From positions 124,001-188,000 of the IMG/VR virus record IMGVR_UViG_3300032245_001746: a DNA stretch of 64,000 nt; one strand, 5' to 3'. The first letter of the stretch is position 1, and each line of letters begins with the position of its first letter. The notes beneath the pieces were generated by a model. That model was not told the DNA's origin, did no database searches, and was given only the letters and a program-made list of their open reading frames with translations. Shown here one piece after another: positions 4,699 to 64,000 of this stretch. The translations under genes were made by a program, and so were the position numbers.

Positions 4699-4711
4699 TA
4701 TTTGTTATATA

Positions 4712-17142: not shown

Positions 17143-20100
17143 ATGAATCAAGTATTTAGGGTGGTAACAAGATTACAAGATTTAGATGATTTTTATGGAT
17201 CATTAACTGATGATCAGTATTTATCATTTGATTCTTCGTTAGATAAATTTACATTAAAATCCTTCAATTTTATTCCAATAAGTGGTTATAACAATCCTAT
17301 TTCGCTAGGAAATTTGGGAGATTCTAATTCTGTTGATCCCTTACTCACAATATCCAGAACTATTTCATCTGGATCAACAAATGCTCATGCTTTTTCAGAT
17401 TCTTCAAATTTTATTCGTAATGGTTATGCCTATAATTCTTTTGATGCTAGAATTAATGCTGGATTTAGTGGTCATACATACGATCATTATGCAGCATTTC
17501 AATCTTTGCCAAATATAAATAATGGATCATGGTCTGATGTTTATGGATTTTATTCCTCAGCTACAGTAAATGGCAACATTACAAGATTCAATCATGCTTG
17601 GGTTGATGATTGTATTGGAACTGGAAGTATTACTACACAATATGGTTATTATTGTGCTTCATTAGCAAAAGCTACAAATAATTGGGCTTTTTATTCTGCT
17701 GGCAGTACGCCAAGTAGAATTGGGGAGCTATCTGTTGGTGATAAATTTTGGATTACTCCAACTAATACTTCTGTTGAAATTGGATATAATATACGTTATA
17801 AAAATGGAGATTGGTATCCTACAGAAACAAGTTCTTATTATTGTTTATTAGAACCTCATTATCCAAGCACAAATTCATTTGCTATATTTACTGGTACAAC
17901 ACCATCAGATGCAAACGCTCCAATTTCTGATTGGCATGTTAGTTTAAGATGTGCAAATGATTCTACAGCAATAGGACCATCTGGTCCATTTATATTTGGT
18001 ACTATATCTAATATGGTTCAAATTGGTGGAGTGTCATCATCATTCCCAGCAATTAAACGTAACGGCGCAGCAATTAATTTCAGAGTTGCTAACGACTCAG
18101 CAGATGCAGATATTACATCTAAAGGTCTTACAGCAAGTGGTCCTATATTATCTACTAACACATATACGTCTGCTACAAATTTTGAACAGCTTAGAATACG
18201 CTCTAATAGCACTCAATATGAAGTCAGTTCTATTGTTGGTTCTGCTGGTGGTAGCCCTAGACCTATTCAGATTGGACATACTAATGCTGCAGGAATTTTT
18301 AGTTCTGCTTTGAGTATTGCTATTGATGGTGGAGTTTTGGCTAGTGGCACTGTATCATCTGTCGGTTCCGTAGCGACAAGGTTCACCGCCGAACGAACAG
18401 CAACAGCAAACGCTCTAATCGAATTAAAGACATCTGCCGGTTCGATTTTTGTTGGTCAAGGTGCGTCCGGTATCTTCGGAGTCAGTAATGCACCAGATCT
18501 GACAGCCGCAGCGTTTAAAGTGACAACTTCAACAGGTGATGTGTCTGCCGGAGCTATCACAGCGAGCGGTAAAATAACTACCGGAACCTCAACCACATCC
18601 CAACAGGGACTGTTGACAAATCGAATTGACCCTATCGATCAGGGCGGAGTGCTGATAGGTTTTGGCAGCGGAAGTATCGGGACGATGATCGTTAATCAGT
18701 TCAATGTGGTATACCAGTCCACGACGCGGAAAGTTTTCTCCAGCACCACGAATTTGAATTCAACTGCTGACCTGTCCTACGGTCGGGACTCTGCGGGAGT
18801 GTTCGGGATTTATACGACTGCGGCGGGGTCAACAAAGGCGGCGTTGACTTGCGGGGCGATCACCGCATCATCTTTCAACTGGGTTCAAGCAGACTCTAGC
18901 GGGGGAAGAAACCGACTTATTGCGGGTGCGGCGAGTGGTATCGACATTCAAGCAAACGAAAACACGAATCCTTTATTTCGCATTACGTATGCTGGTACAG
19001 AATATCCTTTATCTATTACGCGAGCAGCAATTACTGCTAATGTGCCGATATTAGTTACAAATGTATATACATCTACGACGAATTTTGAACAACTTAGAAT
19101 TAGATCTAATAGCACGCAATACGAAATTAGCTCTATTATAGGGTCTGCTGGTGGTAGTAATCGCGATATAGTAATTGGTCATGTTGATGCTGCTGGTACA
19201 ATGACTGCCGCATTAACTGGTGTAACTATTTATGCTAGTGGACTTGTTGAATCCAGACGAGTGTATTTGTGGGAATCATTTCAAGGGCATTATTCGTTTG
19301 GGCGAAATGCGATTCTTGGTGCATCAAGTGCCGCAGGAGTTGTAGGTGGTGATTTTGGTATTACTGCAGCTACTAACGCTGCTGGCACAGTTGATACACG
19401 ACTTAGAAGACTTGGTAGCGGATCGCTTGGTCTTATTAGTGGGGATGCGAATTCTACGACATATGGAAGTTTTACTGCTGGAGCGATCACTGCTAATGGC
19501 TTAATAACAACCTCTGGGTCTGCTAACACTTACAGTGTAACATTACCAAACACTGTTGGTATTGCTGCTAGAAATTCAGGAAATACGGCGTGGAATCGCA
19601 TTCTCAACTACACTGCTGCGAATCAATGTGCCGTTGGCGATTTTGACGGCGGTGGCGGCGGCTTAGGGTTGTATGGATCTGGGGCTAATTTATGGACAAT
19701 CTCATCAGCCGGTCATCTAGCAGCAAGTGGCGCATTTAATATAACAACTACTGGCACTGTCACGGCACCAGTAGTTTCGTTCCCAAATACGACGACACCG
19801 GCATTCCCAGCTAGTGGCATTATAGCCTTCTGTCCGGGGTCTTCAGACCTATGGTTTCGATCTGCGTACGGAAGTAGTTACATCCAAATCGGCGGGGGCA
19901 GCACCACCACATTTGCATCTGCCGGAAATATGACGGTCTCTGGTGCTGGTGGGGTACGCCTGCAAAGCAATCCATTGTCGTCTGGACCGACAGTTTTTGC
20001 AAAAGTGCCATCAACAACAGCAATCAACTTCCGCAATAATGCAGATTCAGCGGACATCGATTTAACTGCGGGTGCGATCACAGTGAGTGGTCCTATACTT

Positions 20101-22128
20101 TCTACAAATCTTTATGTATCATCAACTAATTTTGAACGATTAAGTATAAAGTCAAATAGTACACAGTATGAAATAAGCTCTATAGTAGGTTCTGTTGGCG
20201 GAAGTAATAGAGCTATTCATATTGGACACACTAATGCTGCTGGAGCGTTTACTTCGACATTAACAGTTGCAACTAATGGAAATATTAGTGTCAATGTCGA
20301 TTCTGCTTCGTTCACATTTGGAAAAGTTGGTACTAATAGTTTAGTAGGACAAAATGGCGATCTTTCTGTATTGTCTGGAGGAAATAGAATTCTTTTATTA
20401 GGAGATAATGGAAGTGGGTTAGCATTAGCTAGTTCAGTTGGAATTAATTGGTCTTCCTCAACTTCAGATGCTTATTCTCCTATTGATTATAGATTGCGTA
20501 GAAATGCTGCTGGCCAACTTGATGCTAGGGGTGATGGTGGATTACGAATTCGTAATTTGGCAAACTCAGCAGATGCTCCATTAACCGTTGGCGCAATCAC
20601 GGCGAGTGGCGACATTACTTCAACAGGATTCAAAAGTGGAAATGGCGGGTTATTTTTTCCTGCTGGATATACTGTATTAAGAGATTATTCTGGAAATAAT
20701 GTTTTTGGGGTTAACGCTACAGCGAATATACCTGTATGTTCAACAAATGGATATGGGATAGGAGTCAATTATTATACTCCAGATGTTATCTTAACAAGAG
20801 ATAATGCAAATATTCTTGCTTTACGTAATACGACTAATGCACAAACATTAAGACTATATAATACATATACTTCATCTACTAACAATGAATTTTTACAAAT
20901 CAGAGCAGTAGCTGGAGCTAATTTTGAAATAGGACCACAAAATAGATCTATTGGCGGATCGCTTAGAGGATTAACTATTGGAGGATATGTTGCAGGTAGT
21001 AACACAATTACTCCTTGGATGAAATTTGAAGATGGATATAATTACTCTCATCAGCATTTAAATATGCAAGATAAAAGTATCTTCAATGTTTATCGCCTTG
21101 AAAATTCATCTCAAATGCTTATTAATAGCCCAGAAGTATTTTTCGAAACATCAAATATTAGATTCAAAAATAATTGTTTAAGAACAGATGCAACTTCATC
21201 AGATCCATTCATCTTATATATGGTTGGAAAAACTTATGATGAAAGTGATGATGAATTTATTTCAATTAAAACTGCGTCAACTAGTGATTTTGAGTTTGGA
21301 GTTGGTCACAATAGTGTTGGGTCTTCTGTACAAAGAGGGCTTATAATTGGTAGTTATGATTCCACAATTAATGATACAATTAATCCTTGGCTTAAATTTT
21401 CTACTACTGGTTCTGCTGAATTTTTTGATGCATCAGAATCAATAGTTAAAATAAGTTCTGGCGGTTTGTGTATACAATCAAATCAACTTTTAAAAATGTA
21501 TGATAATGTTGAAAATTCTTATATGTACATAACAGCATTAGACAATACGTTTTATATAAGAAATTTTGATAATGATAAAAATATAGATTTAGAAGCTAAA
21601 GAATTACGTGCTGGGTCAATTTGTACTTATAACACACTCACGCCAATGCCTATAGGGAATTTAACCGAAATCACCAGATTTTATGTTGATGGTGGAATAT
21701 CTGAATTTAATGGTGGAACTGCATTAAACGAAATTAAACATGCTAGAATTTGTCCTCCGACATATTCTAACAGCGTTTCATCTACAATAACTTCTGCTTC
21801 TTCTTTATGTATAGATGGACCGCCAATAGCGGGCACTAATGTGTCAATAACTAATAGTTATGCATTAAAAATTGAATCTGGAAATATATGCTTTTTTAAT
21901 GGTGTTAATATAGTTACAGATATAACTGTTGGTACAAAAATTGGAACAAGTTCTACTCAAAAATTAGGATTTTGGAATGCAACTCCAGTTACACAACCAA
22001 CTACATCGGTTGCTGCTGCAACTCGTGTTGGTAATGCTGGAACTACAATTACAACAGCCGATACTTTTGACGGATACACTATAGCCCAAGTAATTAAAGC
22101 TCTTAGATCTGTTGGGGTTTTAGCTTAA
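17143..22128 (+). CDS. Long tail fibre / receptor-binding protein
   Basis: 1661 aa, Gly/Ser/Thr/Ala-rich, internal repeats, C-terminal KLGFWNATPV..QP..AL..G fibre tip motif. Confidence 0.85.
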   Translation: MNQVFRVVTRLQDLDDFYGSLTDDQYLSFDSSLDKFTLKSFNFIPISGYNNPISLGNLGDSNSVDPLLTISRTISSGSTNAHAFSDSSNFIRNGYAYNSFDARINAGFSGHTYDHYAAFQSLPNINNGSWSDVYGFYSSATVNGNITRFNHAWVDDCIGTGSITTQYGYYCASLAKATNNWAFYSAGSTPSRIGELSVGDKFWITPTNTSVEIGYNIRYKNGDWYPTETSSYYCLLEPHYPSTNSFAIFTGTTPSDANAPISDWHVSLRCANDSTAIGPSGPFIFGTISNMVQIGGVSSSFPAIKRNGAAINFRVANDSADADITSKGLTASGPILSTNTYTSATNFEQLRIRSNSTQYEVSSIVGSAGGSPRPIQIGHTNAAGIFSSALSIAIDGGVLASGTVSSVGSVATRFTAERTATANALIELKTSAGSIFVGQGASGIFGVSNAPDLTAAAFKVTTSTGDVSAGAITASGKITTGTSTTSQQGLLTNRIDPIDQGGVLIGFGSGSIGTMIVNQFNVVYQSTTRKVFSSTTNLNSTADLSYGRDSAGVFGIYTTAAGSTKAALTCGAITASSFNWVQADSSGGRNRLIAGAASGIDIQANENTNPLFRITYAGTEYPLSITRAAITANVPILVTNVYTSTTNFEQLRIRSNSTQYEISSIIGSAGGSNRDIVIGHVDAAGTMTAALTGVTIYASGLVESRRVYLWESFQGHYSFGRNAILGASSAAGVVGGDFGITAATNAAGTVDTRLRRLGSGSLGLISGDANSTTYGSFTAGAITANGLITTSGSANTYSVTLPNTVGIAARNSGNTAWNRILNYTAANQCAVGDFDGGGGGLGLYGSGANLWTISSAGHLAASGAFNITTTGTVTAPVVSFPNTTTPAFPASGIIAFCPGSSDLWFRSAYGSSYIQIGGGSTTTFASAGNMTVSGAGGVRLQSNPLSSGPTVFAKVPSTTAINFRNNADSADIDLTAGAITVSGPILSTNLYVSSTNFERLSIKSNSTQYEISSIVGSVGGSNRAIHIGHTNAAGAFTSTLTVATNGNISVNVDSASFTFGKVGTNSLVGQNGDLSVLSGGNRILLLGDNGSGLALASSVGINWSSSTSDAYSPIDYRLRRNAAGQLDARGDGGLRIRNLANSADAPLTVGAITASGDITSTGFKSGNGGLFFPAGYTVLRDYSGNNVFGVNATANIPVCSTNGYGIGVNYYTPDVILTRDNANILALRNTTNAQTLRLYNTYTSSTNNEFLQIRAVAGANFEIGPQNRSIGGSLRGLTIGGYVAGSNTITPWMKFEDGYNYSHQHLNMQDKSIFNVYRLENSSQMLINSPEVFFETSNIRFKNNCLRTDATSSDPFILYMVGKTYDESDDEFISIKTASTSDFEFGVGHNSVGSSVQRGLIIGSYDSTINDTINPWLKFSTTGSAEFFDASESIVKISSGGLCIQSNQLLKMYDNVENSYMYITALDNTFYIRNFDNDKNIDLEAKELRAGSICTYNTLTPMPIGNLTEITRFYVDGGISEFNGGTALNEIKHARICPPTYSNSVSSTITSASSLCIDGPPIAGTNVSITNSYALKIESGNICFFNGVNIVTDITVGTKIGTSSTQKLGFWNATPVTQPTTSVAAATRVGNAGTTITTADTFDGYTIAQVIKALRSVGVLA
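18138..20245 (+). repeat. Three ~52-codon internal repeats in tail fibre (~18138, ~19042, ~20088)
   Basis: PILxTNxYxSxTNFExLxIxSNSTQYExSSIxGSxGGSxRxIxIGH occurs three times. Confidence 0.85.
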
Positions 22129-52017: not shown

Positions 52018-54153
52018 ATGAAATTGCTTTTTTTCAAAGAATGGTTTAATTTATATGAAGGTAAATTCGAAGATCAATCTTTATCAATATTGAATAAAGA
52101 TGAAGAGTTGTTTAATTTATTAGCTTCAAAAGCACCAGAACCTAAATATTTACCAATTATTTCTTATTTTTATAAACAATCAGGCAATTTAAATGTTTTG
52201 AAAGATTTAATAAATAAATATAAAGAATTTGTTGATAAGAAAAAGCTGTCAATGATTCAAATAACAAACAAAGGAGCTTTTTTAAATAATCAAGAAATTA
52301 ATTATGTTAAATTTGCTGAAATTATACACGCCGCAGAATCAAATAATCGAATTGTTAAAACAAACATAGATACAAACGCATCTGGATTGAAACCTATTTT
52401 TACTATTAAAGATAAAATAGAAATTTATAAAGCTAAAGATTCTAGAGAATGTGTCCTTTTAGGAAAAGGATATACCTTCTGTATAAGTAATCCTAATGCC
52501 GGTCTAAATATGTGGAATACATATAGAAATTCATATGAATCAACTTTTTACTTTGTTTTTGAAAAAACAAGAAGACAAGATGATCCATTAAGAATTGTTG
52601 TTGTAGATGCTCGAAGAGATGGCGATTTTGCACTTACTGATGCTAATAATAAAACTGGAACAATTAGTGAATTTAACCATTTTGATGAGTATTTTGGATA
52701 TCTTAATTCTGTTTATAAAATAAATTCTGATTCTTTATTTATCAATGAGCCACTAACACAGCAAGAAAGAAAAGATAATGCAATAGTAGATCAAAAAATA
52801 ATGACATTAGATAATTTTAAAAAATTGACATTATCACAAAAAGAAAAATATATTGGGAATGGACACGAACTCACCAATGAACAATTTAATTACATTTTTG
52901 ATAACAATATGGTTAATTTTATTATTCAATATATAAACACTGGAATTAAATTGGATAATGATCAATTAAAAAAAATATTTAAAAATCCATCTTATAAAAA
53001 AACTTATTTAAGACAAAGACTTGAAGTTCAAAGACATCTCCATAGACCAGATATTGGAAGATTTGAATATTTAAATTTGGATGATAATTCTAAAAGACAA
53101 ATTGATTTAAACAAAGTTGATAAAAAACAATGGTTTTTAGAAGCTGCGTATTTGGGAGATGAAGAGTATGTTTCGAATACAATTCAAAACTTAAAAGGAA
53201 ATCCTGATGACGATGGCACATTAACATCAGCATATTTGGAAGCTGTAAAATCTAAAAATTTAAATATTGTTAAAATGATAGATGAAAAATTTGATAAATC
53301 TCATGCATTAAGTAAAACTGCCATTGGATGGATATTTGATGATATTACAAAATATAGTACAATTGAAATTTTAGATTATTTTGTTAAAAAATATCATAAA
53401 CATTATAATATTGGATTTGGATTTCAAAACGTTGCAAAAAGAAATGAAGTTGCAATGGTTAAATATTTTATTGATAATTTTGAAATGAAAGATTATGAAT
53501 ATAGTTTAGCATTATATTCATCTGTTAAAAATAATGCTATTGATTCTTTAAATATTATTTTAGACAGCCCAGAATTAGAAAACGAACATACTGTATTAAA
53601 CACCGCTATGAGTATAGCTGCAGAACATGGAAATCTTAAAGTTGCAAAATTAATTTTAGACAAACATAAAATTAATTTTTATGATGCAACTTTAAATGCA
53701 ATAGAACATAAACAATATCAATTTTTAGAATTTATCTTTAAAGCCAGAAAAGATTTTCCTGAAAAATGGCTAGTGGATTTTTTGAAAACTGCAATTAAAG
53801 CTAAAAGCTTACCAATTTTCAAATTGATATTAAGCCAATCATCTGATTCTGAAAAACTACTTAGAAATAATTTGTTAGATTATATTGAAAATTATAAAGA
53901 AGATAATGATGAATTATATAACTTCATTAAAAAGAAAGATTTTGAATTTTATTTTAATTCAGGAATTAATTTAGCAAAATCTTCTGACATAAATTCAAAA
54001 TCAAAAAATGAAATTAAATATTTTTTTAATATGATTAGAGATAATGGAATTAAAGATTTTTCAGAAATTAAAAAGGCTGCAAAAGAAGCTGGAAATATCC
54101 ATACATATAATGTTTTAAATGATATTCCATTTTTGAGAAGTAATTATGAATAA
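52018..54153 (+). CDS. Large protein with leader, possible PcfJ/GNAT-like domain and ankyrin-like repeats
   Basis: MKLLFFKEW..LYE; LG.G..FCIS..W..Y..FYF; repeats such as AAEHGNLKVAKLIL and AVKSKNLNIVK. Confidence 0.6.
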   Translation: MKLLFFKEWFNLYEGKFEDQSLSILNKDEELFNLLASKAPEPKYLPIISYFYKQSGNLNVLKDLINKYKEFVDKKKLSMIQITNKGAFLNNQEINYVKFAEIIHAAESNNRIVKTNIDTNASGLKPIFTIKDKIEIYKAKDSRECVLLGKGYTFCISNPNAGLNMWNTYRNSYESTFYFVFEKTRRQDDPLRIVVVDARRDGDFALTDANNKTGTISEFNHFDEYFGYLNSVYKINSDSLFINEPLTQQERKDNAIVDQKIMTLDNFKKLTLSQKEKYIGNGHELTNEQFNYIFDNNMVNFIIQYINTGIKLDNDQLKKIFKNPSYKKTYLRQRLEVQRHLHRPDIGRFEYLNLDDNSKRQIDLNKVDKKQWFLEAAYLGDEEYVSNTIQNLKGNPDDDGTLTSAYLEAVKSKNLNIVKMIDEKFDKSHALSKTAIGWIFDDITKYSTIEILDYFVKKYHKHYNIGFGFQNVAKRNEVAMVKYFIDNFEMKDYEYSLALYSSVKNNAIDSLNIILDSPELENEHTVLNTAMSIAAEHGNLKVAKLILDKHKINFYDATLNAIEHKQYQFLEFIFKARKDFPEKWLVDFLKTAIKAKSLPIFKLILSQSSDSEKLLRNNLLDYIENYKEDNDELYNFIKKKDFEFYFNSGINLAKSSDINSKSKNEIKYFFNMIRDNGIKDFSEIKKAAKEAGNIHTYNVLNDIPFLRSNYE

Positions 54154-54672
54154 TTAGCAAACAGATTTACAAAAATCATACATTACTATTCCACTAGCAG
54201 TGCCAACATTAAGTGAACGAACAGATCCATATTGTTTTATGTAAAGAAATTCATGACATATTGCTTTCAATTCATCTGTTAATCCAACATTTTCTTCTCC
54301 AAACACAAACAAAATATGTTTGTCACTTGGATAAACATATTTTTCTATTGGTTTTGATTCTTGAATGTTATCAATTCCTATTATATAATAATTTTCTGGA
54401 AAAATAAGTTGTTCAACTTCTTTTACATGCTTTATGTTTTCGTAATTATACGTTCCAACAGTTCCTCTTTTATCATATTGCCTGTGCCCATAGATTATCA
54501 CTTCTTTTGCTAAGAATGCATTAGAATTTCTTATGACGACACCTAAATTAAAATCCCTTATTACGTTTTGAACTAATACCGAGAAGTTATTTCTTTTTTG
54601 ATCTAAATTGGTTTTTATTGCTTCTATATCCCAGTATTTGTAATAATCTATTACATTTCTATTGTCAGTCAT
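54154..54672 (-). CDS. SpoU/TrmH RNA methyltransferase
   Basis: NLG..IR...AF, VFGEE..GL, I.QYG...SLNV..A. Confidence 0.9.
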   Translation of the reverse strand: MTDNRNVIDYYKYWDIEAIKTNLDQKRNNFSVLVQNVIRDFNLGVVIRNSNAFLAKEVIIYGHRQYDKRGTVGTYNYENIKHVKEVEQLIFPENYYIIGIDNIQESKPIEKYVYPSDKHILFVFGEENVGLTDELKAICHEFLYIKQYGSVRSLNVGTASGIVMYDFCKSVC

Positions 54673-55423
54673 TGACTAAACTTTCATTTTTTGGAAATAT
54701 CAATTTTAATTCACCACTATAATCTTCAATTATTGCAGAACAGGATTCAACCCAATCTCCACAATTGTAATAATTTATTTCATCTATTTTTTTAATTACT
54801 GGTGTGTGTATATGACCACATATTATTCCAGAACACTCTTTGTTTAAAGTATATTGGACAACAGATTGTTCAAAGTCATTCACAAAATTTACTGCTTTTT
54901 TTACACTTTGTTTTAATTTTGAACTTAATGAATAATATTCATATCCAAACAATTTTCTTATTTTGTTGAAAAGTAAATTTGTCCACATTGCAAATGAATA
55001 TGCTTTGTCTCCTAGATAATACAACCACTTGGATTTAACAGTGATATTATCAAATATATCTCCATGAATAATAAGTAATTTTTCTTTATTTAAAGTCTCA
55101 TAAACATATTCATTTAATATTTCTACATTTCCAAAGTTAACTCCAGAATATTTTCTCATAAATTCATCATGGTTTCCAGTTATGTAATAAACCTTGGTTC
55201 CATGTTTAATCATTCCTAATATTCTTTTGAATATCATTGTATATTCATCAGTCCAATATATTTTGTTTTTCATTTTCCAACCATCAATTATATCTCCAAC
55301 TAAAAATAAATTTTCTGGTTCAACAGATTTGAGAAAATTTAAAAGATGATCTGATTTTGCATGACTACATCCTAAATGGGAATCTGATATAAATAAAGAT
55401 TTAACTTTTAATCGGTTTTTCAT
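54665..55423 (-). CDS. LpxH-like metallophosphoesterase
   Basis: ISDSHLG, LVGDIIDGW, GNHD, HGD.FD, CGHIH, NCGDWVE. Confidence 0.88.
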   Translation of the reverse strand: MKNRLKVKSLFISDSHLGCSHAKSDHLLNFLKSVEPENLFLVGDIIDGWKMKNKIYWTDEYTMIFKRILGMIKHGTKVYYITGNHDEFMRKYSGVNFGNVEILNEYVYETLNKEKLLIIHGDIFDNITVKSKWLYYLGDKAYSFAMWTNLLFNKIRKLFGYEYYSLSSKLKQSVKKAVNFVNDFEQSVVQYTLNKECSGIICGHIHTPVIKKIDEINYYNCGDWVESCSAIIEDYSGELKLIFPKNESLVND

Positions 55424-56487
55424 TAATTCTCCAATAAATAACTATTTATTAAAGTAACAGCTTGATCTGCCCCGTTAATTTTTGATGAATTTTTAGTTTT
55501 AAATTCATTTAAAAAATCTTGAATTAATTCAAAATTTAGATCTTTTAAATAACAAAAAGTGCCAGCATTCATTTTTTGAATAAAAAATGCATTAATATAT
55601 TGCTCTGCTTGATTGTGTTCTGGAATTGTAAATATTGGTTTTCCACAATAAATTCCTTCTCCTATAAGCTGATTGCCAGATGCACAAAATAAATAAGAAC
55701 AATTAGCCAAATCATTTAAGAAATTATAATTTGATATATCATTATATTCAATATTTGAATACATTCTTTTTTCTTTTGGACATCCATATACTTTGATTTT
55801 ATATTTTGATGATATCTTATTTAATTGTTCTAAAATCTGATCACCACTAGATTTTTTATAATACACTAAAATAAAATTATTATCTTTAATTTCCATCTTT
55901 TCTAAAGAAGATCTTATAAAACAATTTGCTAAAAAAGTTGATTTTGATTTCTTTTTTATTTTAGAATGATAAAAAGTTGAAATAAGAATTCCACTTGGAT
56001 TTGGAACTAATAATTCTGTATACAATCCCATTATCCAAGAATAAAATTTTAATTTTAAACTCAAATCTTCTGTATAACATCTACTAAATTTATGTTGATT
56101 ATCAATACTTAAATATTTAATATTTAGTTTTTTTGCAATCCTTGGAAGAATCGGTTCAAAATCAGAAATTATTAAATCCGGATTTAGATCTATAATAATA
56201 TTTTTAATATCATTAAAGCTTTTTTTATATTTTTTTATAAAGTGAAAAAAATTATTAATAGTTTTAGGAATACTGATGGTTCCAGATTTACTTCTTCCAA
56301 ATGGTAATTCTGCTTCTATTTTATAAAGATGAGGATAATTTTGTTCTTTAAAAAAATTGTAAGCCTCACCCCAAGTGAATATATGAACTTTAATTGAAGG
56401 ATCTAGTTTTTCCAAAACAGAATAAGTTCTTGTCGCGTGACCTAAACCCTCGCCAGGTAAACTATAACATATTGTTTTTTCAATCAT
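55423..56487 (-). CDS. Glycosyltransferase (MJ1255-like, GT-B)
   Basis: GEGLGHATR, ISDFEP, IDNQH, G.QL..E....KP...P...EQ..NA. Confidence 0.85.
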   Translation of the reverse strand: MIEKTICYSLPGEGLGHATRTYSVLEKLDPSIKVHIFTWGEAYNFFKEQNYPHLYKIEAELPFGRSKSGTISIPKTINNFFHFIKKYKKSFNDIKNIIIDLNPDLIISDFEPILPRIAKKLNIKYLSIDNQHKFSRCYTEDLSLKLKFYSWIMGLYTELLVPNPSGILISTFYHSKIKKKSKSTFLANCFIRSSLEKMEIKDNNFILVYYKKSSGDQILEQLNKISSKYKIKVYGCPKEKRMYSNIEYNDISNYNFLNDLANCSYLFCASGNQLIGEGIYCGKPIFTIPEHNQAEQYINAFFIQKMNAGTFCYLKDLNFELIQDFLNEFKTKNSSKINGADQAVTLINSYLLEN

Positions 56488-56489
56488 TT

Positions 56490-56801
56490 TTAAACTTTCT
56501 TAACAGTAAATACAAATTGTGCTGGATAATCTGAATGTGACTCATAATATGCTGGCTTTTGATAAGTGACTTTCCATCCACTTTCTTCATAAAATGGTTC
56601 TATATCAAGATATTTGTTTTTATACACATCATCTTCACTTATGTTCATAACTTTTTTTATCTCGCAAACAACTTTATCTTGATAAACAATAGATTTATTA
56701 TTGTTAAAATTTTTAGCAATTTCTTTATTGAAAATTTCAATTATTCTTTCATCAATAAATTTATTTTCAATAACTTCTTTTGGAGTAATTGGTTTAATCA
56801 T
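56490..56801 (-). CDS. Hypothetical phage protein
   Basis: KPITP, LDIE..Y...GWKV.Y.KP.Y.E pattern. Confidence 0.7.
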   Translation of the reverse strand: MIKPITPKEVIENKFIDERIIEIFNKEIAKNFNNNKSIVYQDKVVCEIKKVMNISEDDVYKNKYLDIEPFYEESGWKVTYQKPAYYESHSDYPAQFVFTVKKV

Positions 56802-57804
56802 GACTAATCAATTCTAACTTTTCAAAAGGACAATTTTTTGTTGTTTGATAATATTTAATTCTACCGTCTAAAGTTTGAACTAAATACTTGCTATTTATTC
56901 GAACTTTCCAAATATCTCTTTTTTCAGATGAAGAAAGATCTGATGCCAACCCTTCAACATGATTGAAATCGTTTGCTAAAAATATATTTGCTGGTAATTC
57001 TTTAGTGTTTAAATAAAAATTTCTATCTTGTTTAGGTCTAGCTGTATAAAGAGTAAGTGTTTTTGATTTCGATGCCGTTGGATTTCTAAGCTTTTCAATT
57101 AAACTAAAATAATCAGATTGAATTTTTGCATCTTTGAAAAAATCTTCATCGCCACCTTCCAATATATCATCTATTTCTATTTCGTTATTTTTAATAAAAA
57201 TTGTAAAACTTGTATTCCTAGAACGATCTAAAATAATTTCTGCTGTAGTTGATGCATCTAAACTTAAAGAATTAAATTCATTTTTCCCAAGATATGGTCT
57301 TATAATTATCTCAGACAAATTCCAATTTTCTATTAAATTTATAGCATTTATTATTTTTGTCTTTAATGCTTCCATTATTAATTTTGTTTCATTCATTGCT
57401 AATGCAGCTTTATTTTTTGCTTCTGTAAGCTCATTTTCTAATCCAGAACTTGTAGATAAAGTATCCATGTAAACAAATATTTGGTTGCTTATTTCACGCA
57501 ATTTGCTTGATATTTTATAATCTTGAGATAAGATCCAATCTCTCAATTGTTTTTGTTGATCAAAAATATAATTTATATTTTTAGATTTTATACTATTTAA
57601 TAAATTGTTTAATTTTGGATAATTAAACAATTTAGAATTTATTGTATTAATGAAATTTTCAAAATTAAAATTTTTAATTTTTTCATAATAATCTTCTATG
57701 CGATTTAAATATTCTTCTAAAGCTTGATTGATAGAAGTCTCATATTGTTTGTAATCAATGATTATTTTATTATCAAACGATTCTATCCAAATTTTAAAAT
57801 TCAT
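56794..57804 (-). CDS. Protein with leader and putative C-terminal ADP-ribosyltransferase-like domain
   Basis: MNFKIWIE; TLYTAR...IFLAND....A...IWKVRI spacing. Confidence 0.4.
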   Translation of the reverse strand: MNFKIWIESFDNKIIIDYKQYETSINQALEEYLNRIEDYYEKIKNFNFENFINTINSKLFNYPKLNNLLNSIKSKNINYIFDQQKQLRDWILSQDYKISSKLREISNQIFVYMDTLSTSSGLENELTEAKNKAALAMNETKLIMEALKTKIINAINLIENWNLSEIIIRPYLGKNEFNSLSLDASTTAEIILDRSRNTSFTIFIKNNEIEIDDILEGGDEDFFKDAKIQSDYFSLIEKLRNPTASKSKTLTLYTARPKQDRNFYLNTKELPANIFLANDFNHVEGLASDLSSSEKRDIWKVRINSKYLVQTLDGRIKYYQTTKNCPFEKLELISHD

Positions 57805-57805
57805 T

Positions 57806-57952
57806 TTAATCTCTACATGTTAAATTAATTAAAACATAAGGACCTGTTAATAAACATTTCATAACATGAAACGGTGTTATCTCAATTTTATTGAAAATAC
57901 TATATAATATTGAAAAAAGTCCAATTATTATCCATAAAATAAAAATTTCCAT
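57806..57952 (-). CDS. 48-aa membrane protein (below ORF-track cutoff)
   Basis: AAGGAGG RBS; MEIFILWIIIGLFSILYSIF. Confidence 0.65.
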   Translation of the reverse strand: MEIFILWIIIGLFSILYSIFNKIEITPFHVMKCLLTGPYVLINLTCRD

Positions 57953-57980
57953 AAAAACCTCCTTGGTTTTATTTTTACTT

Positions 57981-59547
57981 TATTTATTAATCTAATGATG
58001 GAATTTTTATTGTTTAAAATTTAATTAAGACTTATTTTTTATTCCAATTTTAATGTTATTTATTTCTGTTTCTGTCCATGTACTAGATGTATTTGGATTT
58101 ACATTAAATATTTCTGTATGATATGGAGTAGTTGATTGCAAAGTCCCATTCACAGTTTTATTTGATCCAACTTCGTTGTTATTAATTACAAATTTTGTAA
58201 TTCCATCAACAGCAGCTTGAGACTCAGCAAATAATGAATTTAATTGAATTCCTTTAATATTATTAATTGTTGATAAATTTTTTATATTAAATTGAGATAC
58301 ATCGCCGTTAACACTTGATGTAATAAATTTAGTTATATTACTATGTACTTGTGACATTTCTCTAGCATTTAAAGAATTAGTGTAATCAAGTGACCAATCA
58401 TCCATGTAAATTGCTGCTGTATGTGGTCCAAATTTAATCGTACTTGGAGAAGTTAAATTAAAAGTAAATTGCTGATATGTAGTTGTAACATTAATCGTTG
58501 ATTGAACATTATTTATTGTGATTGGATATGAAGTTGATGGCTGTCCAACACCAACTCTAGCCCAAAATGAAAAAATACTTGCATTTGTATCAAATTGAAA
58601 CCAACAAGAAGTATTTATAATAGACAATCCTGCCGGAGTAGTTCTGACAACCGAACCAGAAGTTTCTCTTATAATACCTCTATTACCAGAAGTAATTTCA
58701 TTTAAATAACTAATATTTGTACATCCAAGTGGAATTAAAAATTCATGCGGGTCAGTAAATGATGTAGTAAACGATGTTGATAATACGGTTCCATTAGCGT
58801 TACCAAAATTTGAAGTATCATCAGTTATTGGTATTAATGTTTCTATTCTTGGAATATACAATTCAGTTCCAATTTTAACGTTATTTGCTGCACCAGTGTC
58901 ATCAAGAATATAAAAATCATCAATTAAATATGTTGAATATAAACCAACAGCCAAAGTAAAAGTTCCATCATAACTCATTGATGTGGCACTTGTTGCTCGC
59001 TCCGTGCCATTAATGTAAAGACGAATTGGATTTCCAACCGAAGGAGTAATTGGAATTAACATTTCAATATGTGCCCAATTATTGAACATGACTGAACTTG
59101 GTTGTGTATACAAAAGAACATTATTTAAATAAATTATATGATTTCCACTCGAATTATTATAAAGTATTTTAAGTCCTTTGGTATTATCGTTAGCACCATT
59201 TGATAATCTAATTTCAAAATTTAAAGCTGATGTAACTTTAATGTTAAATCCCAATATAAAATGAGAAATACCTGTTGCAGATATTGCTTTTTTTAAAAAA
59301 CCAGCATTTTTAGGACTTGTTATTTGAACAGCACTACCACTAAATCTTCCAGGTTTAGCAATCCACGATCCAGATACAGTTGTCCAATTCCTAGCCAATC
59401 CTGTTGTGACATTATCCGTTGGATCATTTGATGATGTGTTTAATTGAAAATTTCCATAATTATCAAATCCCTCTAAAAATCTAATTGCCATTTATACTCC
59501 AATTAATTTGTATAATAAATATATTTATTAATCTAATGATGGAATTT
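57981..59547. repeat. Exact 26-bp direct repeats (57981-58006 and 59522-59547) flanking one gene
   Basis: TATTTATTAATCTAATGATGGAATTT at both sites. Confidence 0.9.
58025..59491 (-). CDS. Probable virion appendage / tail protein (lectin-like beta sandwich)
   Basis: F.EGFD.Y start, W.HIE..., LYING, IDDFYILD.TG..NN, NP.T...WT. Confidence 0.6.
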   Translation of the reverse strand: MAIRFLEGFDNYGNFQLNTSSNDPTDNVTTGLARNWTTVSGSWIAKPGRFSGSAVQITSPKNAGFLKKAISATGISHFILGFNIKVTSALNFEIRLSNGANDNTKGLKILYNNSSGNHIIYLNNVLLYTQPSSVMFNNWAHIEMLIPITPSVGNPIRLYINGTERATSATSMSYDGTFTLAVGLYSTYLIDDFYILDDTGAANNVKIGTELYIPRIETLIPITDDTSNFGNANGTVLSTSFTTSFTDPHEFLIPLGCTNISYLNEITSGNRGIIRETSGSVVRTTPAGLSIINTSCWFQFDTNASIFSFWARVGVGQPSTSYPITINNVQSTINVTTTYQQFTFNLTSPSTIKFGPHTAAIYMDDWSLDYTNSLNAREMSQVHSNITKFITSSVNGDVSQFNIKNLSTINNIKGIQLNSLFAESQAAVDGITKFVINNNEVGSNKTVNGTLQSTTPYHTEIFNVNPNTSSTWTETEINNIKIGIKNKS

Positions 59548-60292
59548 CTGATTGTTTTACATCTCTTCCATACTTTCTTGAGTGTCCAAAATCAAAAGAT
59601 TGTAATTTATTTTTATTATTTAATCCCAAATTGTCAGGAGACCAATCATGTCCTATGGAATATCCAGTTTTTTTAAACACCTTTTCCATTAATTTTATAA
59701 TTTGATTTGCAAAATCCAAAACCATTGGATCTTCTGGGCGTCCAGCCATCCAATAATTAAATTCTTTTATGTTAAATTTGGTTGGAACTTTAGTTTTATC
59801 TTTGTTTTCATCTTCTAAATCAGAAATAAATTGATAAACTAAATAAGTTGCATCATGTATTTCAATATCTATTTTTTTAAAATCAGTATTTAACTCTTTC
59901 ATTGCAATTAAATACATTCCCTGATATGTAATAACATCAACAACCGGAAAGCTTGCATCTCCTTTCATTAAATAAGCTATATTTGCCTCATCTACTCCTT
60001 TTGTAAATTTAACTACATATTTATTTCCTAAAAACAATACGCATCCTTCCATTCCACACTTGGTTTTATTATGTGATCCAGGAATAAATTTTGAATTAAA
60101 TTTTCTAATCCAATTACATAAGGTTCCACAAGAATTTCCATCCATTAATTCTTGTGGAACCTTAGATATTACATTATCTTCATTAAAAACATCTGAAGAA
60201 TAGAGTTTTTTCAAACCAAACACCACCCTCTCAGCAGTTTGCATTAAAAAACTTGTTTGTCTTTCTGTTATTAACCATTCTTTGAAATTCAT
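59528..60292 (-). CDS. Kinase-like protein with leader (paralog of 62319..63101)
   Basis: G.EG.V, VVKF..EA, HDWSPDNLG, FDFG. Confidence 0.7.
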   Translation of the reverse strand: MNFKEWLITERQTSFLMQTAERVVFGLKKLYSSDVFNEDNVISKVPQELMDGNSCGTLCNWIRKFNSKFIPGSHNKTKCGMEGCVLFLGNKYVVKFTKGVDEANIAYLMKGDASFPVVDVITYQGMYLIAMKELNTDFKKIDIEIHDATYLVYQFISDLEDENKDKTKVPTKFNIKEFNYWMAGRPEDPMVLDFANQIIKLMEKVFKKTGYSIGHDWSPDNLGLNNKNKLQSFDFGHSRKYGRDVKQSEIPSLD

Positions 60293-60302
60293 AATTTATA
60301 TA

Positions 60303-61583
60303 TTAAACAAGTATATTTTTTATTATTTTTCCACCATCAACAATTTCAATTGGTCGTCCACCTGGTGCCATTAATTCCTTGTCTGCATTAATTCCAATTC
60401 TATCATAAATAGTTGCAGCCCAATCTTCAATTTCAACCGGATTATCTTGAGGTTCTGATGCTGTAGAATTTGAAGATCCATATACCATCCCTCGTTTAAT
60501 ACCACCACCAGCAAGTATTGTACTAAATACTTTTGGCCAATGATCACGACCCGAAGTGTTATTTATTTTCGGAGTTCTTCCGAATTCACTAGAAACACAA
60601 ACTAATGTTTCATTTAAAATTCCCCGTTCTTCTAAATCATTAATTAATTTAGCAAACGCTTGATCAAATGCTGGAACTTGATTATTCATTCCAACCGCTA
60701 TGTTATCATGCATATCCCAACCGCCATAAGTTAATGTAACAAAACGTACACCAGATTCTATTAATCTACGTGCCATTAACATTCTGCTTCCTGCTGTGTT
60801 CCTTCCATATTCATCTTTTGTTTTATCAGTTTCTTTACTTAAATCAAAAGCTTCTTTGGCTTGAGGAGAATCTAATAAATTATATGCTTTTTCATAAAAA
60901 GTATTCATTGCAACAAAATTGTCAGATTCTGATTTAAATCCTGAATTTACTATTTCTAATGCTTTTTTTCTTTTATTAAATCTGATTTCATCAATTCCTT
61001 GAGGAAGACTTAAATCTCTAACTGCAAAGTTTGGATCTGCTGGATCAGAACCTAAACTAAATGGTGCAAAAGATGAACTTAAATAACCTGTTCCAGCAAA
61101 TTCATTTGGTTGATTTGGTATACAAACATATTGTGGTAAATTATTTCTGACTGCATATTCATGAGAAATTACACTTCCAATACTTGGATAATTTAAAGCT
61201 GGACTTGGCTTGTAACCAGTAAATAAATTGTGTGTTCCACGCTCATGTGCTGCTTCTCCATGAGTCATAGAATTAATAATTGTTATTTTATCCATAACAG
61301 TTGCTGTATTTTTCCAATTTTCACTCAAATAAATTCCACCTACATTTGTTTGAATTGAAGAAAATGGTCCTCTATATTCAATTGGAGCATTTGGTTTTGG
61401 ATCAAAACTTTCTTGATGTGCCATTCCTCCTGGAAGAAATATAAATATTACAGATTTAGCTGGTCCATCTTTTGATTCATGATTTTTAATGTCTCCAAAT
61501 GACTTTAATGCAAAAAAATTAGATAATGATAATCCAATTCCTCCACAAAAACCCGCTTGTATAAAATTTCTTCTTTTTATCAT
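60303..61583 (-). CDS. DUF1501 family protein with Tat-like signal
   Basis: RRNFI signal; AKSVIFIFL.GG.AH.ESFDPKP, LMARRL.E.GVRFV, GWDMH, EFGRTP, GRDHW. Confidence 0.9.
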   Translation of the reverse strand: MIKRRNFIQAGFCGGIGLSLSNFFALKSFGDIKNHESKDGPAKSVIFIFLPGGMAHQESFDPKPNAPIEYRGPFSSIQTNVGGIYLSENWKNTATVMDKITIINSMTHGEAAHERGTHNLFTGYKPSPALNYPSIGSVISHEYAVRNNLPQYVCIPNQPNEFAGTGYLSSSFAPFSLGSDPADPNFAVRDLSLPQGIDEIRFNKRKKALEIVNSGFKSESDNFVAMNTFYEKAYNLLDSPQAKEAFDLSKETDKTKDEYGRNTAGSRMLMARRLIESGVRFVTLTYGGWDMHDNIAVGMNNQVPAFDQAFAKLINDLEERGILNETLVCVSSEFGRTPKINNTSGRDHWPKVFSTILAGGGIKRGMVYGSSNSTASEPQDNPVEIEDWAATIYDRIGINADKELMAPGGRPIEIVDGGKIIKNILV

Positions 61584-62248
61584 TTTTGATCCTTTAATTT
61601 TTCTTTTAATTCTTTTAAATCTGAATCATAAACCGTTTTTTTCAAACCTTTTAATTTATTGGCTATTGGCTCTTTGAATAATCCATGATCATGTAAATAT
61701 TTTAACCTGACCATACCTCTTATCCATACCTTTTCATTTTCAAATAATAAATCATCTTCTAAAGTAATAAAAATTACAAATTTATTATTTAATATTTTAT
61801 CATCACTTGTGAAAATATGTTCATCCAAACCTCCAGGACCAAATTTGTTTTTATATTGAAAAGTCCAAGATTCATTAGCTAAATCATTAGTACCTCTTCT
61901 TACGAATGAACAATTTCTTTGTGTAGTTGATTTTACTGCAAATTTTTCTCCAACATCTTCTTGCCAGCTTTTTTCTAAAGGTTTATATACTTTTGTATCA
62001 ATTTCAATATTATTTATTATTTTCAACTCTTCTTTTAACCATTTATATGCTATAAATTCTGCTGCCTTTGAATATGCGTCTTGTTTTGACAGTTTTCTTG
62101 GATCTGCATTACGTTTTATGCACAAATAATTGTTAAATGCAGATTTTTCTTGAGTATAATTGTTACAACAATCAATTAAATTTTGACTTAAAAAGTAACA
62201 ACATTTATCTTCTAAATAAATTAAATTTCGTTCTGTTTCTGTCATCAT
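61580..62248 (-). CDS. Hypothetical protein, possibly restriction-endonuclease fold
   Basis: K.AE...D......VKS spacing. Confidence 0.45.
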   Translation of the reverse strand: MMTETERNLIYLEDKCCYFLSQNLIDCCNNYTQEKSAFNNYLCIKRNADPRKLSKQDAYSKAAEFIAYKWLKEELKIINNIEIDTKVYKPLEKSWQEDVGEKFAVKSTTQRNCSFVRRGTNDLANESWTFQYKNKFGPGGLDEHIFTSDDKILNNKFVIFITLEDDLLFENEKVWIRGMVRLKYLHDHGLFKEPIANKLKGLKKTVYDSDLKELKEKLKDQK

Positions 62249-62318
62249 ATAGAATCATTTCTTTAAAAATACAAAATTATTGTACGAATACATCAAGGCT
62301 TTTCAATAAATATTCAGT

Positions 62319-63101
62319 ATGAATTTTAAAGAATGGTTAATAAATGAAAGAAATAACGATGCATTTGAAATAAGAATGAAAAAAATAACTTCATTTTTAT
62401 TAAAACTTTATTATGGAATTCAATTTAACGAAATTGCTGAAGTCCCACGTGAATTGTTTTCAGATAATAAATCTAGTAAATTATTTAATTGGATTAAAAG
62501 ATTTGATCCAAATTTTAAATCTGCTGATGGACTAAAAATAAAATCTGGAACGGAAAGTTCCGTGTTGTTTTTAGGAAATGGTATTGTAATTAAATTCAAT
62601 GATAATCCAAGTGAAGCCAATATCGCCTTTTTAATAAAGGGAGACCCAGATTTTCCAGTTTTAGATGTTGGCTCTTTTAATGATAACAATAATTTAATTT
62701 ATGTAATAGCAATGAAAGAATTAAAAGTGTCTTTTAATGAATTGAAACAAGATGTTGAGTCAGCTTTGAATTTGGTCCATATGTTTCAATATAAATTAAA
62801 AGAAATAAATAAATTAAATTCTAAAAAAGTTGTATCTGAATTTAATGAATATAATTTTTTTAGATGGCTATCTTCATATAAAGGAAGAGAAAATCGTTCG
62901 TATCAAATATTGGTTTATTGTATACAACTAATAAAATTATATAATAAATTACATGATAAAACAGGATATTATTCTGCAAACGATATTCATGATGGAAATT
63001 TCGGTCTTACAGATAAAAACACATTGTCTACATTTGATTATGGTTATTCTGATTTAGTTGATCCAAAAAAATCCAAAAACATTGAAATCGATGGTGTTTA
63101 A
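62319..63101 (+). CDS. Kinase-like protein with leader (paralog of 59528..60292)
   Basis: GTES.V, VIKF..EA, DIHDGNFG, FDYG. Confidence 0.75.
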   Translation: MNFKEWLINERNNDAFEIRMKKITSFLLKLYYGIQFNEIAEVPRELFSDNKSSKLFNWIKRFDPNFKSADGLKIKSGTESSVLFLGNGIVIKFNDNPSEANIAFLIKGDPDFPVLDVGSFNDNNNLIYVIAMKELKVSFNELKQDVESALNLVHMFQYKLKEINKLNSKKVVSEFNEYNFFRWLSSYKGRENRSYQILVYCIQLIKLYNKLHDKTGYYSANDIHDGNFGLTDKNTLSTFDYGYSDLVDPKKSKNIEIDGV

Positions 63102-63352
63102 TTGAGTTTTTGTCGACAAACTCCACAAAACTTACGGTTTTTCATGTTTTCAATAGAGCAATTTATTGTTAAACCACAATATAAACAATAAGGTTCTCCT
63201 TTTGAAGAAACAGACCAACCTTTTCGTTCAACCATTTCAATATCTTCATCTGAAACTTCGTCTGGATCACATCCGAATAAAACGTGTAAGTTTTCAGTTT
63301 CGTCATAATAAGATTTCATAAAGTTTTCCTTAAAAAAGGAATCATACTTCAT
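63098..63352 (-). CDS. Small Zn-ribbon protein
   Basis: CLYC and CGVC pairs. Confidence 0.55.
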   Translation of the reverse strand: MKYDSFFKENFMKSYYDETENLHVLFGCDPDEVSDEDIEMVERKGWSVSSKGEPYCLYCGLTINCSIENMKNRKFCGVCRQKLN

Positions 63353-63368
63353 TTTGAATTAAAGTGAA

Positions 63369-64000
63369 CTAAATAATTAGCTCCCACTTGTCATTTCCAC
63401 AATCAAACACTCTTTCGTAATGATTTAAACTCATTATTTCATGTTCAGATAGTTTTTCATCATAGTATGGCATATTTTTAATTGATTTTTTTGTAAAATT
63501 CATTCTATTAAATACTTTTTTGTTCTTTAAGTTGAAATAAAAGTAGCCGGGTTGAGATGAACCGATATATGAAAATCCTAGTTTTTTATAAAGATTTCCA
63601 TTTGACCATCTTTTATCTGAATAAGATATCAATTTTCCATGATATTTTTTCTTAAATTCTTTTAACAATTTTCCTGCTGCTCCTATAACATTTGTATTTA
63701 ATTTAGAACAATATCTTATTAATTCATAATCATATTGTTTGTTAAATCTGGGTAGTCCAAAAGTCATGCAAGCAACTAATTCATTTTCATATACCAATCC
63801 GAAATAAATTGTTGAATTATCAATTCCTTGTATGTGATTTTTATTTAAAAATAAATTTTTTTCTTCTTTTGTTAAAGTTATAATTTTACATTTTCTGGCA
63901 AAGATTTTATTGTTGTTGCCAATTAAACTTTTAATTCTCGATTTAACTATTTCTTGTTTTTCATTCCATTCATGTTCAAATATTTGAATCAACTTTATTT
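63369..64000 (-). mobile_element. Hef-like homing endonuclease, C-terminal part (starts beyond window)
   Basis: IQIFEHEW, IFARKC, NHIQG, ELIRYC, SYSDKRWS, RVFDCG; paralog of 5503..7137. Confidence 0.8.

What the first reader, a model, noticed from the sequence alone, without database searches (positions are those of the whole stretch)
57981..59547. Structural gene flanked by exact 26-bp direct repeats duplicating the 3' end of the neighbouring kinase
Seen: the repeat contains the kinase C-terminus (IPSLD-stop) plus TAATAAATA. One copy ends the kinase gene; the other is stranded 1541 bp away beyond the 488-aa appendage-like gene. No integrase is nearby. Inference: a recent single-gene cassette insertion by short homology, reversible by excision of a 1541-bp circle, possibly switching a virion appendage on or off in the population.
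Basis: partly seen in the sequence, partly recalled or inferred. Interest (0 to 1): 0.6.

Follow-up and report, generated by a model that had tools for sequence, protein, structure and literature searches.

The report
Swappable gene slot in jumbo phage
In an uncultivated jumbo phage, a 488-aa lectin-fold gene sits between two identical 26-bp repeats in a slot that close relatives leave empty and more distant relatives fill with a second kinase-like gene; this is ordinary phage gene shuffling, caught with unusually clean boundaries.

Summary
An exact 26-nt direct repeat lies at 57981-58006 and 59522-59547, 1541 bp apart. These are its only two copies in the 320-kb phage record, and it is longer than chance repeats.

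One copy is the tail of a 254-aa kinase-like gene (K1). The other is stranded 18 nt beyond the 488-aa gene.

Contigs from at least three other studies are 91-97% identical and join 57980 directly to 59522, keeping one repeat copy.

The repeat was probably not made by the insertion. In more distant relatives the same slot holds K2, a 36%-identical paralogue of K1. K1 and K2 there share the same conserved tail, so the repeat comes from paralogy. The window also appears to keep the K1-K2 spacer.

Most likely the 488-aa gene took K2's place. Recombination between the two tails then removes or moves whatever fills the slot. Whether gain or loss came first within the close clade is unresolved.

On/off switching inside one population could not be tested, because only contigs were available. 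A virion role for the LamG/ConA-like protein is unproven. This is a tidy new example of a known kind of event, of modest interest.

The parts
59522..59547 (-). Repeat copy R: the 3' tail of K1 (2 nt + IPSLD + TAA + TAAATA)
   Evidence: It aligns with the single copy in the empty-site relative L010.
57981..58006 (-). Repeat copy R': the stranded K-type tail, closing no gene
   Evidence: Its downstream flank, up to the ribosome-binding site of the 48-aa gene, is orthologous to what follows K1 in L010 and K2 in L005/L016/L017.
57981..59521 (-). The 1541-bp segment missing from empty-site relatives (equivalently 58007-59547)
   Evidence: L010 1-1059 matches 60580-59522 and L010 1034-1393 matches 58006-57648, and the two matches overlap by exactly the 26 nt; contigs of X2 and X3 join 57980 to 59522, with 26 letters fitting both sides; X7 joins 57975 to 59522 with 6 other letters.
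58025..59491 (-). 488-aa cargo gene (P0001): three beta-sandwich domains with a LamG/ConA-like lectin fold
   Evidence: (phrog_2448 and phrog_6368, unknown function). There are no Pfam hits.
59492..59521 (-). 30-nt leader of the cargo gene: a likely relic of the K1-K2 spacer and K2 start, then a GGAG ribosome-binding site
   Evidence: Similarity to the K1-K2 spacer of L005 gives P about 0.001-0.009 against genome nulls.
58007..58024 (-). 18 nt between the cargo stop codon and R'; its last ~10 nt resemble the K1 codons just upstream of the tail (1 gap, 1 mismatch)
   Evidence: The evidence is weak (P about 0.03).
59528..60292 (-). K1: a 254-aa divergent protein-kinase-like gene (P0002)
   Evidence: invariant K95, E102, D216, N221, D234, G236; all 60 matches shown against PDB sequences are kinases, best E 2.4e-4.
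57806..57952 (-). Conserved 48-aa hydrophobic small gene that bounds the slot on the downstream side
   Evidence: It is present in every relative that has this synteny.
56794..57804 (-). Conserved 336-aa gene (P0003), the downstream anchor of the synteny
60303..61583 (-). DUF1501 gene, the upstream anchor of the synteny
62319..63101 (+). K3: a third kinase-like paralogue (40% identical to K1) with a different tail

Best explanation
The window comes from a T4-like jumbo phage with a tail sheath, a gp15-like protein and 25-28% G+C. In this phage group the ancestral gene order is DUF1501, K1, K2, a 48-aa gene, then a 333-336-aa gene. K1 and K2 are old tandem paralogues of a kinase-like gene. Both end in the same conserved tail of about 26-33 nt (EIPSLE/D, stop, TAAATA...). 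In the window's lineage the body of K2 was replaced by a compact cassette: a ribosome-binding site plus the 488-aa lectin-fold ORF. The K1-K2 spacer and the last 26-40 nt of the K-type tail were left in place. The cargo is therefore flanked by two copies of that tail. Homologous recombination between the two tails, by the phage's own recombination system, deletes the cargo precisely and leaves the one-copy empty site seen in close relatives. The same recombination could move the cargo between co-infecting relatives, and it would also explain why the tails stay alike within a genome. Shown: the repeat, the exact indel, the three slot states, the shared K1/K2 tail, and the synteny. Inferred: that K2 was replaced rather than the site filled de novo, the recombination mechanism, and the direction of change within the close clade.
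For: The exact repeat is unique in the genome and beyond chance. Empty site: the two halves of L010 overlap by exactly the 26 nt. Contigs from three other studies skip 1541 bp with 26 letters fitting both sides. K2 state: L005/L006, L016 and L017/L018 have K1 followed directly by K2, then the 48-aa and 333-aa genes; L019/L020 have the same order from K2 onward, their contigs ending just upstream of K2. K2 orthologues are 53-81% identical and only 36% identical to K1. The duplication is therefore much older than the split of these phages. The 26-nt cores of K1 and K2 match at 24-25 of 26 within genomes, while the gene bodies are 63-66% identical. The codons just upstream tend to match within a genome (L016, L017), which suggests conversion between the tails. 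The window's sequence after K1 resembles the K1-K2 spacer and K2 start of L005 and L016. The stranded copy carries the same derived GATTAA variant as K1 of the window and of L010.
Against: All the closest relatives (91-97% identity) are empty and only the window genome is occupied. Parsimony within that clade therefore favours a recent gain into an empty site. The spacer and K2-start relic is short and AT-rich (P about 0.001-0.009). The upstream extension of the stranded tail is weak (P about 0.03). The stranded tail resembles the window's own K1 tail as much as any K2 tail, which also fits a duplication of K1's end. No donor of the cargo was found; the best relative is 43% identical. No recombination intermediate was seen.
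Confidence: 0.65

Rival explanations
1. One reading: a recent de novo insertion of a single-gene cassette into an L010-like empty site. The insertion used or duplicated 26 nt of K1's tail. The similarity of the left junction to the K1-K2 spacer is then chance.
For: All four empty-site sequences are the window's closest relatives. The two copies are 26/26 identical and share the clade-specific GATTAA variant with K1. The insert is minimal: leader, ORF and 18 nt.
Against: It does not explain why the same slot, with the same flanking tails, holds K2 in more distant relatives. It does not explain the spacer similarity. There is no integrase, transposase or homing endonuclease in or beside the insert. 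No inverted repeat pairing the two ends of the insert is among the 25 longest of 128 listed. A circle able to integrate by homology must already carry the tail, which only pushes the origin back to a tail-flanked donor.
Confidence: 0.22
2. The conserved tail is a dedicated docking site for cargo genes downstream of K1. It would be kept by selection and used repeatedly, like an integrase-free counterpart of an integron attachment site.
For: There are three different slot states bounded by the same conserved core. The core is far more conserved than the gene bodies. P0001-family genes sit at different places in different relatives.
Against: The core encodes a conserved C-terminal peptide in an AT-biased genome, which alone could explain its conservation. 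There are only two copies per genome. No secondary structure, promoter or terminator was found. Only two kinds of occupant are known.
Confidence: 0.1
3. The repeat is a chance match in AT-rich DNA, or an assembly artefact.
For: The genome is 72% A+T, and repeats of 18-22 nt arise by chance.
Against: A 26-nt repeat was never reached in 20 simulated genomes. The repeat coincides exactly with the indel boundaries in independent data sets. The occupied form occurs in the Logan contig and in the ENA contig, which is 100% identical to the window over 10,976 nt.
Confidence: 0.02

Closest known systems
PeSL-mediated modular shuffling in T4-type phages (Arbiol et al. 2010, PMC2839356; Comeau et al. 2014, PMC4122927)
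   Same: It occurs in T4-like phages. Single non-essential ORFs are inserted, deleted or replaced between close relatives, bounded by short direct repeats. In that system, recombination between the repeats can release mini-circles.
   Different: A PeSL is a promoter plus a stem-loop terminator, present in many copies in hyperplastic regions. Here the repeat is the coding tail of two paralogous genes. It has no promoter-like or hairpin signal and only two copies. Circles were not tested.
Deletion or replacement between short direct repeats of tandem paralogues (general homologous or short-homology recombination; phage mosaicism)
   Same: Tandem paralogues supply the flanking homology. Precise loss leaves one hybrid copy. 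The repeats show signs of concerted evolution.
   Different: Here the homology is confined to about 26-33 nt at the very 3' ends, while the gene bodies have diverged to 63-66%. One paralogue has been swapped for an unrelated gene.
Spontaneous loss of flexible ORFan regions in cyanomyovirus S-PM2 (Puxty et al. 2015, PMC4503421)
   Same: Dispensable accessory genes of a T4-like phage are present or absent between otherwise near-identical genomes.
   Different: That case is a large multi-gene deletion seen during laboratory passage. This one is a single gene, seen only between environmental assemblies.
Integron cassettes and site-specific islands
   Same: A single promoterless ORF lies with a repeat at its 3' end, next to a fixed site.
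   Different: No integrase and no structured attC-like site were found.

Membership tests
PeSL mobile regulatory cassette (T4-type phages) | Strong sigma-70-like early promoter inside the repeat | tested here: not met
   no promoter-like site lies at either repeat copy. The region has 15 sites against 16.9 expected from shuffles.
PeSL mobile regulatory cassette (T4-type phages) | Stem-loop terminator inside the repeat | tested here: not met
   no terminator-like sites; folding z-scores are -0.10 and -0.06.
PeSL mobile regulatory cassette (T4-type phages) | Many copies scattered through hyperplastic regions | tested here: not met
   only two copies in the 319,857-bp record at up to 3 mismatches (the record is 63% complete).
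PeSL mobile regulatory cassette (T4-type phages) | Indels between close relatives bounded by the repeat | tested here: met
PeSL mobile regulatory cassette (T4-type phages) | Mini-circles formed by exchange between neighbouring copies | not testable with these tools
   Only Logan contigs were served for all runs. No raw reads were available.
Site-specific integration / integron cassette | Integrase (tyrosine or serine recombinase) encoded nearby | tested here: not met
   Pfam and PHROG scans of ORFs from 52018 to 63992 found none.
Transposon / insertion sequence with target-site duplication | Transposase in the insert and terminal inverted repeats | tested here: not met
   The only ORF is the LamG-like protein. 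One search shows no inverted repeat pairing 58007-58030 with 59495-59521 among the 25 longest of 128 found.
Homing-endonuclease-driven insertion | Endonuclease gene within or next to the mobile segment | tested here: not met
   None in the insert. The nearest HNH/Mom-like ORF is 3.8 kb away at 63369-63992.
Protein-kinase-like superfamily (K1, K2, K3) | Conserved beta3 Lys, helix-C Glu, catalytic Asp...Asn loop and DFG-type Asp | tested here: met
   K95, E102, D216, N221, D234 and G236 are invariant in 8 sequences; a profile against PDB sequences shows only kinases among the 60 matches listed, best E 2.4e-4, over profile positions 110-251.
Protein-kinase-like superfamily (K1, K2, K3) | Passes a curated family threshold or gives a clear fold match | tested here: inconclusive
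   K1 has no Pfam hit. One family member reaches Pkinase at E 0.0046 and one reaches ABC1 at 0.0061. The model has pLDDT 72.9 with a poorly modelled catalytic end. The top Foldseek hits are mostly kinases and aminoglycoside phosphotransferases, but only at E about 0.09 or weaker.
LamG / concanavalin-A-like lectin fold (488-aa protein) | Beta-sandwich jelly-roll domains matching the family | tested here: inconclusive
   No Pfam hit. The model is all-beta in three domains, with pLDDT 65.7. Foldseek matches CBM and lectin-like sandwiches at low TM of 0.2-0.3. The Atlas neighbours are phage proteins, some carrying Laminin_G_3. The related L017 protein hits Laminin_G_3 at E 3e-5, below the cut-off.
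Virion structural / appendage protein (488-aa protein) | Located in a structural module, or detected in virions | tested here: inconclusive
   In relative L013, two shorter family members lie in the tail module near gp15, the sheath and the tube. In the window and in L016/L017, family members lie among DUF1501, kinase-like, glycosyltransferase and phosphatase genes. No proteomics exist.

The most novel reading that the evidence does not exclude
The conserved 26-33-nt K-type tail is a selected docking site with no integrase. The phage's own recombinase would use it to load, unload and exchange cargo genes (K2, the lectin-fold gene, or nothing) downstream of K1. This would make receptor-binding or decoration proteins a rapidly switchable trait in jumbo-phage populations.
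Probability: 0.1. Interest if true: 0.6.

Novelty: new member of a known kind. Interest (0 to 1): 0.3.

Why it matters
This is a clean natural example of how a jumbo phage gains, loses or swaps a single accessory gene. All three states of one slot are documented in environmental data, and the boundaries are resolved to the base. It shows that the diverged ends of tandem paralogues can act as the short homology for such swaps, without any dedicated mobile-element machinery. If the lectin-fold cargo is a virion adhesin, the polymorphism could change host or surface binding between otherwise near-identical phages. It does not reveal a new mechanism.

Tried and rejected
- **Public phage collections:** IMG/VR searches with K1, the 488-aa protein, P0003 and the repeat pattern gave nothing useful. 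INPHARED tblastn found nothing for K1 and only distant N-domain matches for the 488-aa protein. Relatives came from the protein word search plus contig look-ups, and from the one metagenome scan.
- **Own-genome copy of the cargo:** none was found, so an intragenomic source is not shown; the record is 63% complete.
- **Regulatory role for the repeat:** promoter, terminator or hairpin roles were rejected.
- **Transposon, integrase and homing models:** rejected for lack of enzymes and end structures.
- **Chance and misassembly:** rejected.
- **Within-population switching:** the source run shows only the occupied contig, but contigs drop rare variants, so this is no evidence either way.
- **Clostridial toxin matches:** the fold-search rows for receptor-binding domains of clostridial toxins reflect only the generic lectin-like jelly-roll. 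TM scores are 0.2-0.3 and identity is 9-14%. They are not read as a toxin relationship.
- **Checks not used or not triggered:** No alternative genetic code was used.

Full report
**What the window is.** The window is bases 124001-188000 of a 319,857-bp IMG/VR virus record, estimated 63% complete. It encodes a tail sheath, a T4 gp15-like sheath stabiliser, Mom-like proteins, an RNA ligase, Thg1 and an NAD synthase. G+C is about 25-28%. A relative's contig also carries a gp23-type capsid protein and a prohead protease. This is therefore an uncultivated T4-like jumbo phage. A 530,789-bp ENA contig is 100% identical to the window over 10,976 nt around the finding.

**The observation.** An identical 26-mer lies at 57981-58006 and 59522-59547, 1541 bp apart.
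- All genes here are on the - strand. On that strand the 26-mer reads as two bases of a Glu codon, then I-P-S-L-D, TAA, then TAAATA.
- The upstream copy ends ORF 59528-60292 (K1, 254 aa).
- The downstream copy lies 18 nt after the stop of ORF 58025-59491 (488 aa) and ends nothing.
- These are the only two copies in the genome at up to 3 mismatches.
- Random genomes with the same 3rd-order composition gave longest repeats of 18-22 nt, never 26.

**The empty site exists.**
- A metagenome contig (L010, 1393 bp) carries the DUF1501 gene end, K1, a 48-aa gene and the start of the 336-aa gene, with no 488-aa gene.
- L010 1-1059 matches window 60580-59522 at 91.4%. L010 1034-1393 matches 58006-57648 at 93.6%. 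The two matches overlap in L010 by exactly the 26 nt.
- Logan contigs of four runs were laid on 56800-60800. The likely source run (X1) shows one contig with the occupied form.
- Runs from three other studies (X2; X3, riverine; X7, wastewater) each have a contig 93-97% identical that joins 57980 to 59522. In X2 and X3, 26 letters fit both sides. In X7 there are six other letters, which match L010's variant. X7 and L010 may therefore not be independent.
- None of these three runs has a contig that spans the 488-aa gene; only short, low-depth pieces match parts of it.

**A third state changes the interpretation.**
- In more distant relatives, K1 is followed directly by a 255-259-aa gene, K2. These relatives have K1 66-81% identical to the window's. 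K2 is followed by the same 48-aa and 333-aa genes, a glycosyltransferase, a metallophosphatase and a SpoU methylase. This order is seen from K1 in L005/L006, L016 and L017/L018, and from K2 onward in L019/L020, whose contigs end just upstream of K2.
- K2 is a paralogue of K1, 36% identical. K2 orthologues are 53-81% identical to one another.
- The K1/K2 duplication is therefore far older than these phages' divergence, and the K1-K2 tandem is the ancestral order.
- Every K1 and K2 ends in the same core: the IPSL-E/D codons, a stop, and TAAATA. Within one genome the two cores match at 24-25 of 26 positions. The bodies of K1 and K2 are only 63-66% identical at the DNA level.
- The direct repeat is thus a standing feature of this locus. 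It is the shared tail of two paralogues, and it flanks whatever lies between K1 and the 48-aa gene.
- The codons just upstream of the core tend to agree within a genome rather than between orthologues (L016, L017), which suggests conversion between the tails.

**Relics in the window.**
- After K1's stop, the window resembles the K1-K2 spacer of L005 and L016, up to and including the position of K2's start codon, now ATA. It then diverges into a GGAG ribosome-binding site and the 488-aa ORF. Against genome-derived nulls this similarity has P of about 0.001-0.009.
- On the other side, the stranded core is preceded by about 10 nt that resemble the K1 codons upstream of the tail, with one gap and one mismatch. 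This is weak (P about 0.03).
- Downstream of the stranded core, the sequence is orthologous to what follows K1 in L010 and K2 elsewhere.
- The unique DNA is therefore minimal: a 30-nt leader, the ORF, and 18 nt.
- I read this as K2's body having been replaced by the cargo ORF, with the spacer and tail left in place.
- One caveat: the stranded core carries the same derived GATTAA variant as K1 of the window and of L010, whereas other relatives have GAACAA or GAATAA. This fits either conversion between the two tails or a duplication of K1's own end.

**Direction of change.** All the closest relatives are empty and only the window genome is occupied. Within that clade, a recent gain is the more parsimonious reading. 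But precise loss between 26-nt repeats is easy and could recur. With a single occupied genome, the direction cannot be settled. Any homology-driven gain needs a donor in which the cargo is already flanked by the tail. That again points to K2 replacement as the first step.

**What the repeat is not.**
- It has no promoter-like site, terminator or significant hairpin, so it is not a PeSL of the kind described for T4-type phages (PMC2839356, PMC4122927).
- The insert has no integrase, transposase or homing endonuclease, and no terminal inverted repeats were found.
- The nearest nuclease-like gene, Mom/HNH-like, is 3.8 kb away.

**The genes.**
- *K1, K2 and K3.* K3 lies at 62319-63101 on the + strand and is 40% identical to K1. 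The three share invariant Lys, Glu, Asp...Asn and Asp-x-Gly positions laid out as in protein kinases. A profile of the family shows only protein kinases among the 60 matches listed against PDB sequences, with a best E of 2.4e-4. Pfam thresholds are not reached, and the fold search is weak although its top hits are mostly kinases. 'Kinase-like' is reasonable; activity is untested.
- *The 488-aa protein.* It has no Pfam hit. It matches two PHROGs of unknown function. It models as three beta-sandwich domains. Its fold neighbours are lectin-like, CBM and LamG sandwiches, and phage proteins of unknown function.
- *Where shorter family members lie.* Two sit in the tail module of relative L013. One sits two genes upstream of DUF1501 in L016, and probably one in L017.
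- The family is thus a flexible accessory family in these phages, possibly a virion adhesin or decoration protein. The window gives no direct evidence for a structural role.

**Verdict.** Its reading is only partly right. The repeat is a paralogue tail that pre-dates the cargo. The cargo sits in K2's slot. Population-level switching and circles remain untested, because only contigs were available. This is a well-resolved example of known short-homology gene shuffling in phages: a new member of a known kind, of modest interest.

Noticed in passing
window 62319-63101 (+): A third kinase-like paralogue (K3, 260 aa, 40% identical to K1) lies 2 kb from K1 on the opposite strand. Its C-terminal tail is different. 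The phage group keeps a small family of these divergent kinase-like genes.
   Followed up: partly
L013:4457-4512: In a related jumbo phage, an exact 28-nt tandem duplication includes the stop codon of a 912-aa gene. It sits immediately upstream of a P0001-family gene. This is another duplicated gene end beside this cargo family.
   Followed up: no
L013:4545-8077 compared with window 4174-5236: Relative L013 carries an extra block of six genes (912, 350, 254, 214, 358 and 139 aa). It lies between the Acb1-like gene and the tail genes and includes two P0001-family paralogues. The window phage lacks this block at that position.
   Followed up: partly
window 4712-5236 (-): A 174-aa 2H-phosphoesterase matches the anti-CBASS Acb1 family above Pfam's cut-off (E 1.8e-8) and 2_5_RNA_ligase2. 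It is a candidate counter-defence gene.
   Followed up: no
window 17143-22128 (+): A 1661-aa ORF has no Pfam hit and a local G+C of up to 46% in a 25% G+C genome. Part of it is 67% identical to a 1207-aa protein on the contig that carries the best relative of the 488-aa protein.
   Followed up: no
G000:C1:262000-319857 (outside the window): There are many exact direct repeats of 31-75 nt, for example at 289032/289575, 278873/279519 and 267058/282032. There is also a tRNA-like 33-mer at 264552/317566. The record ends in an (AATC)n run.
   Followed up: no
L016, L017 (tails of K1 and K2): The 2-3 codons upstream of the shared tail agree between K1 and K2 of the same genome but differ between genomes. 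This looks like gene conversion confined to the last ~40 nt of the paralogues.
   Followed up: partly
L004:7329-8576 and L007:1503-2111: In the most distant K1-bearing relatives (66-68% identity), K1 sits in a different neighbourhood. It follows Mom-like and DUF723 genes and precedes a 415-aa gene. Its tail core is still conserved, but the downstream flank is unrelated.
   Followed up: no
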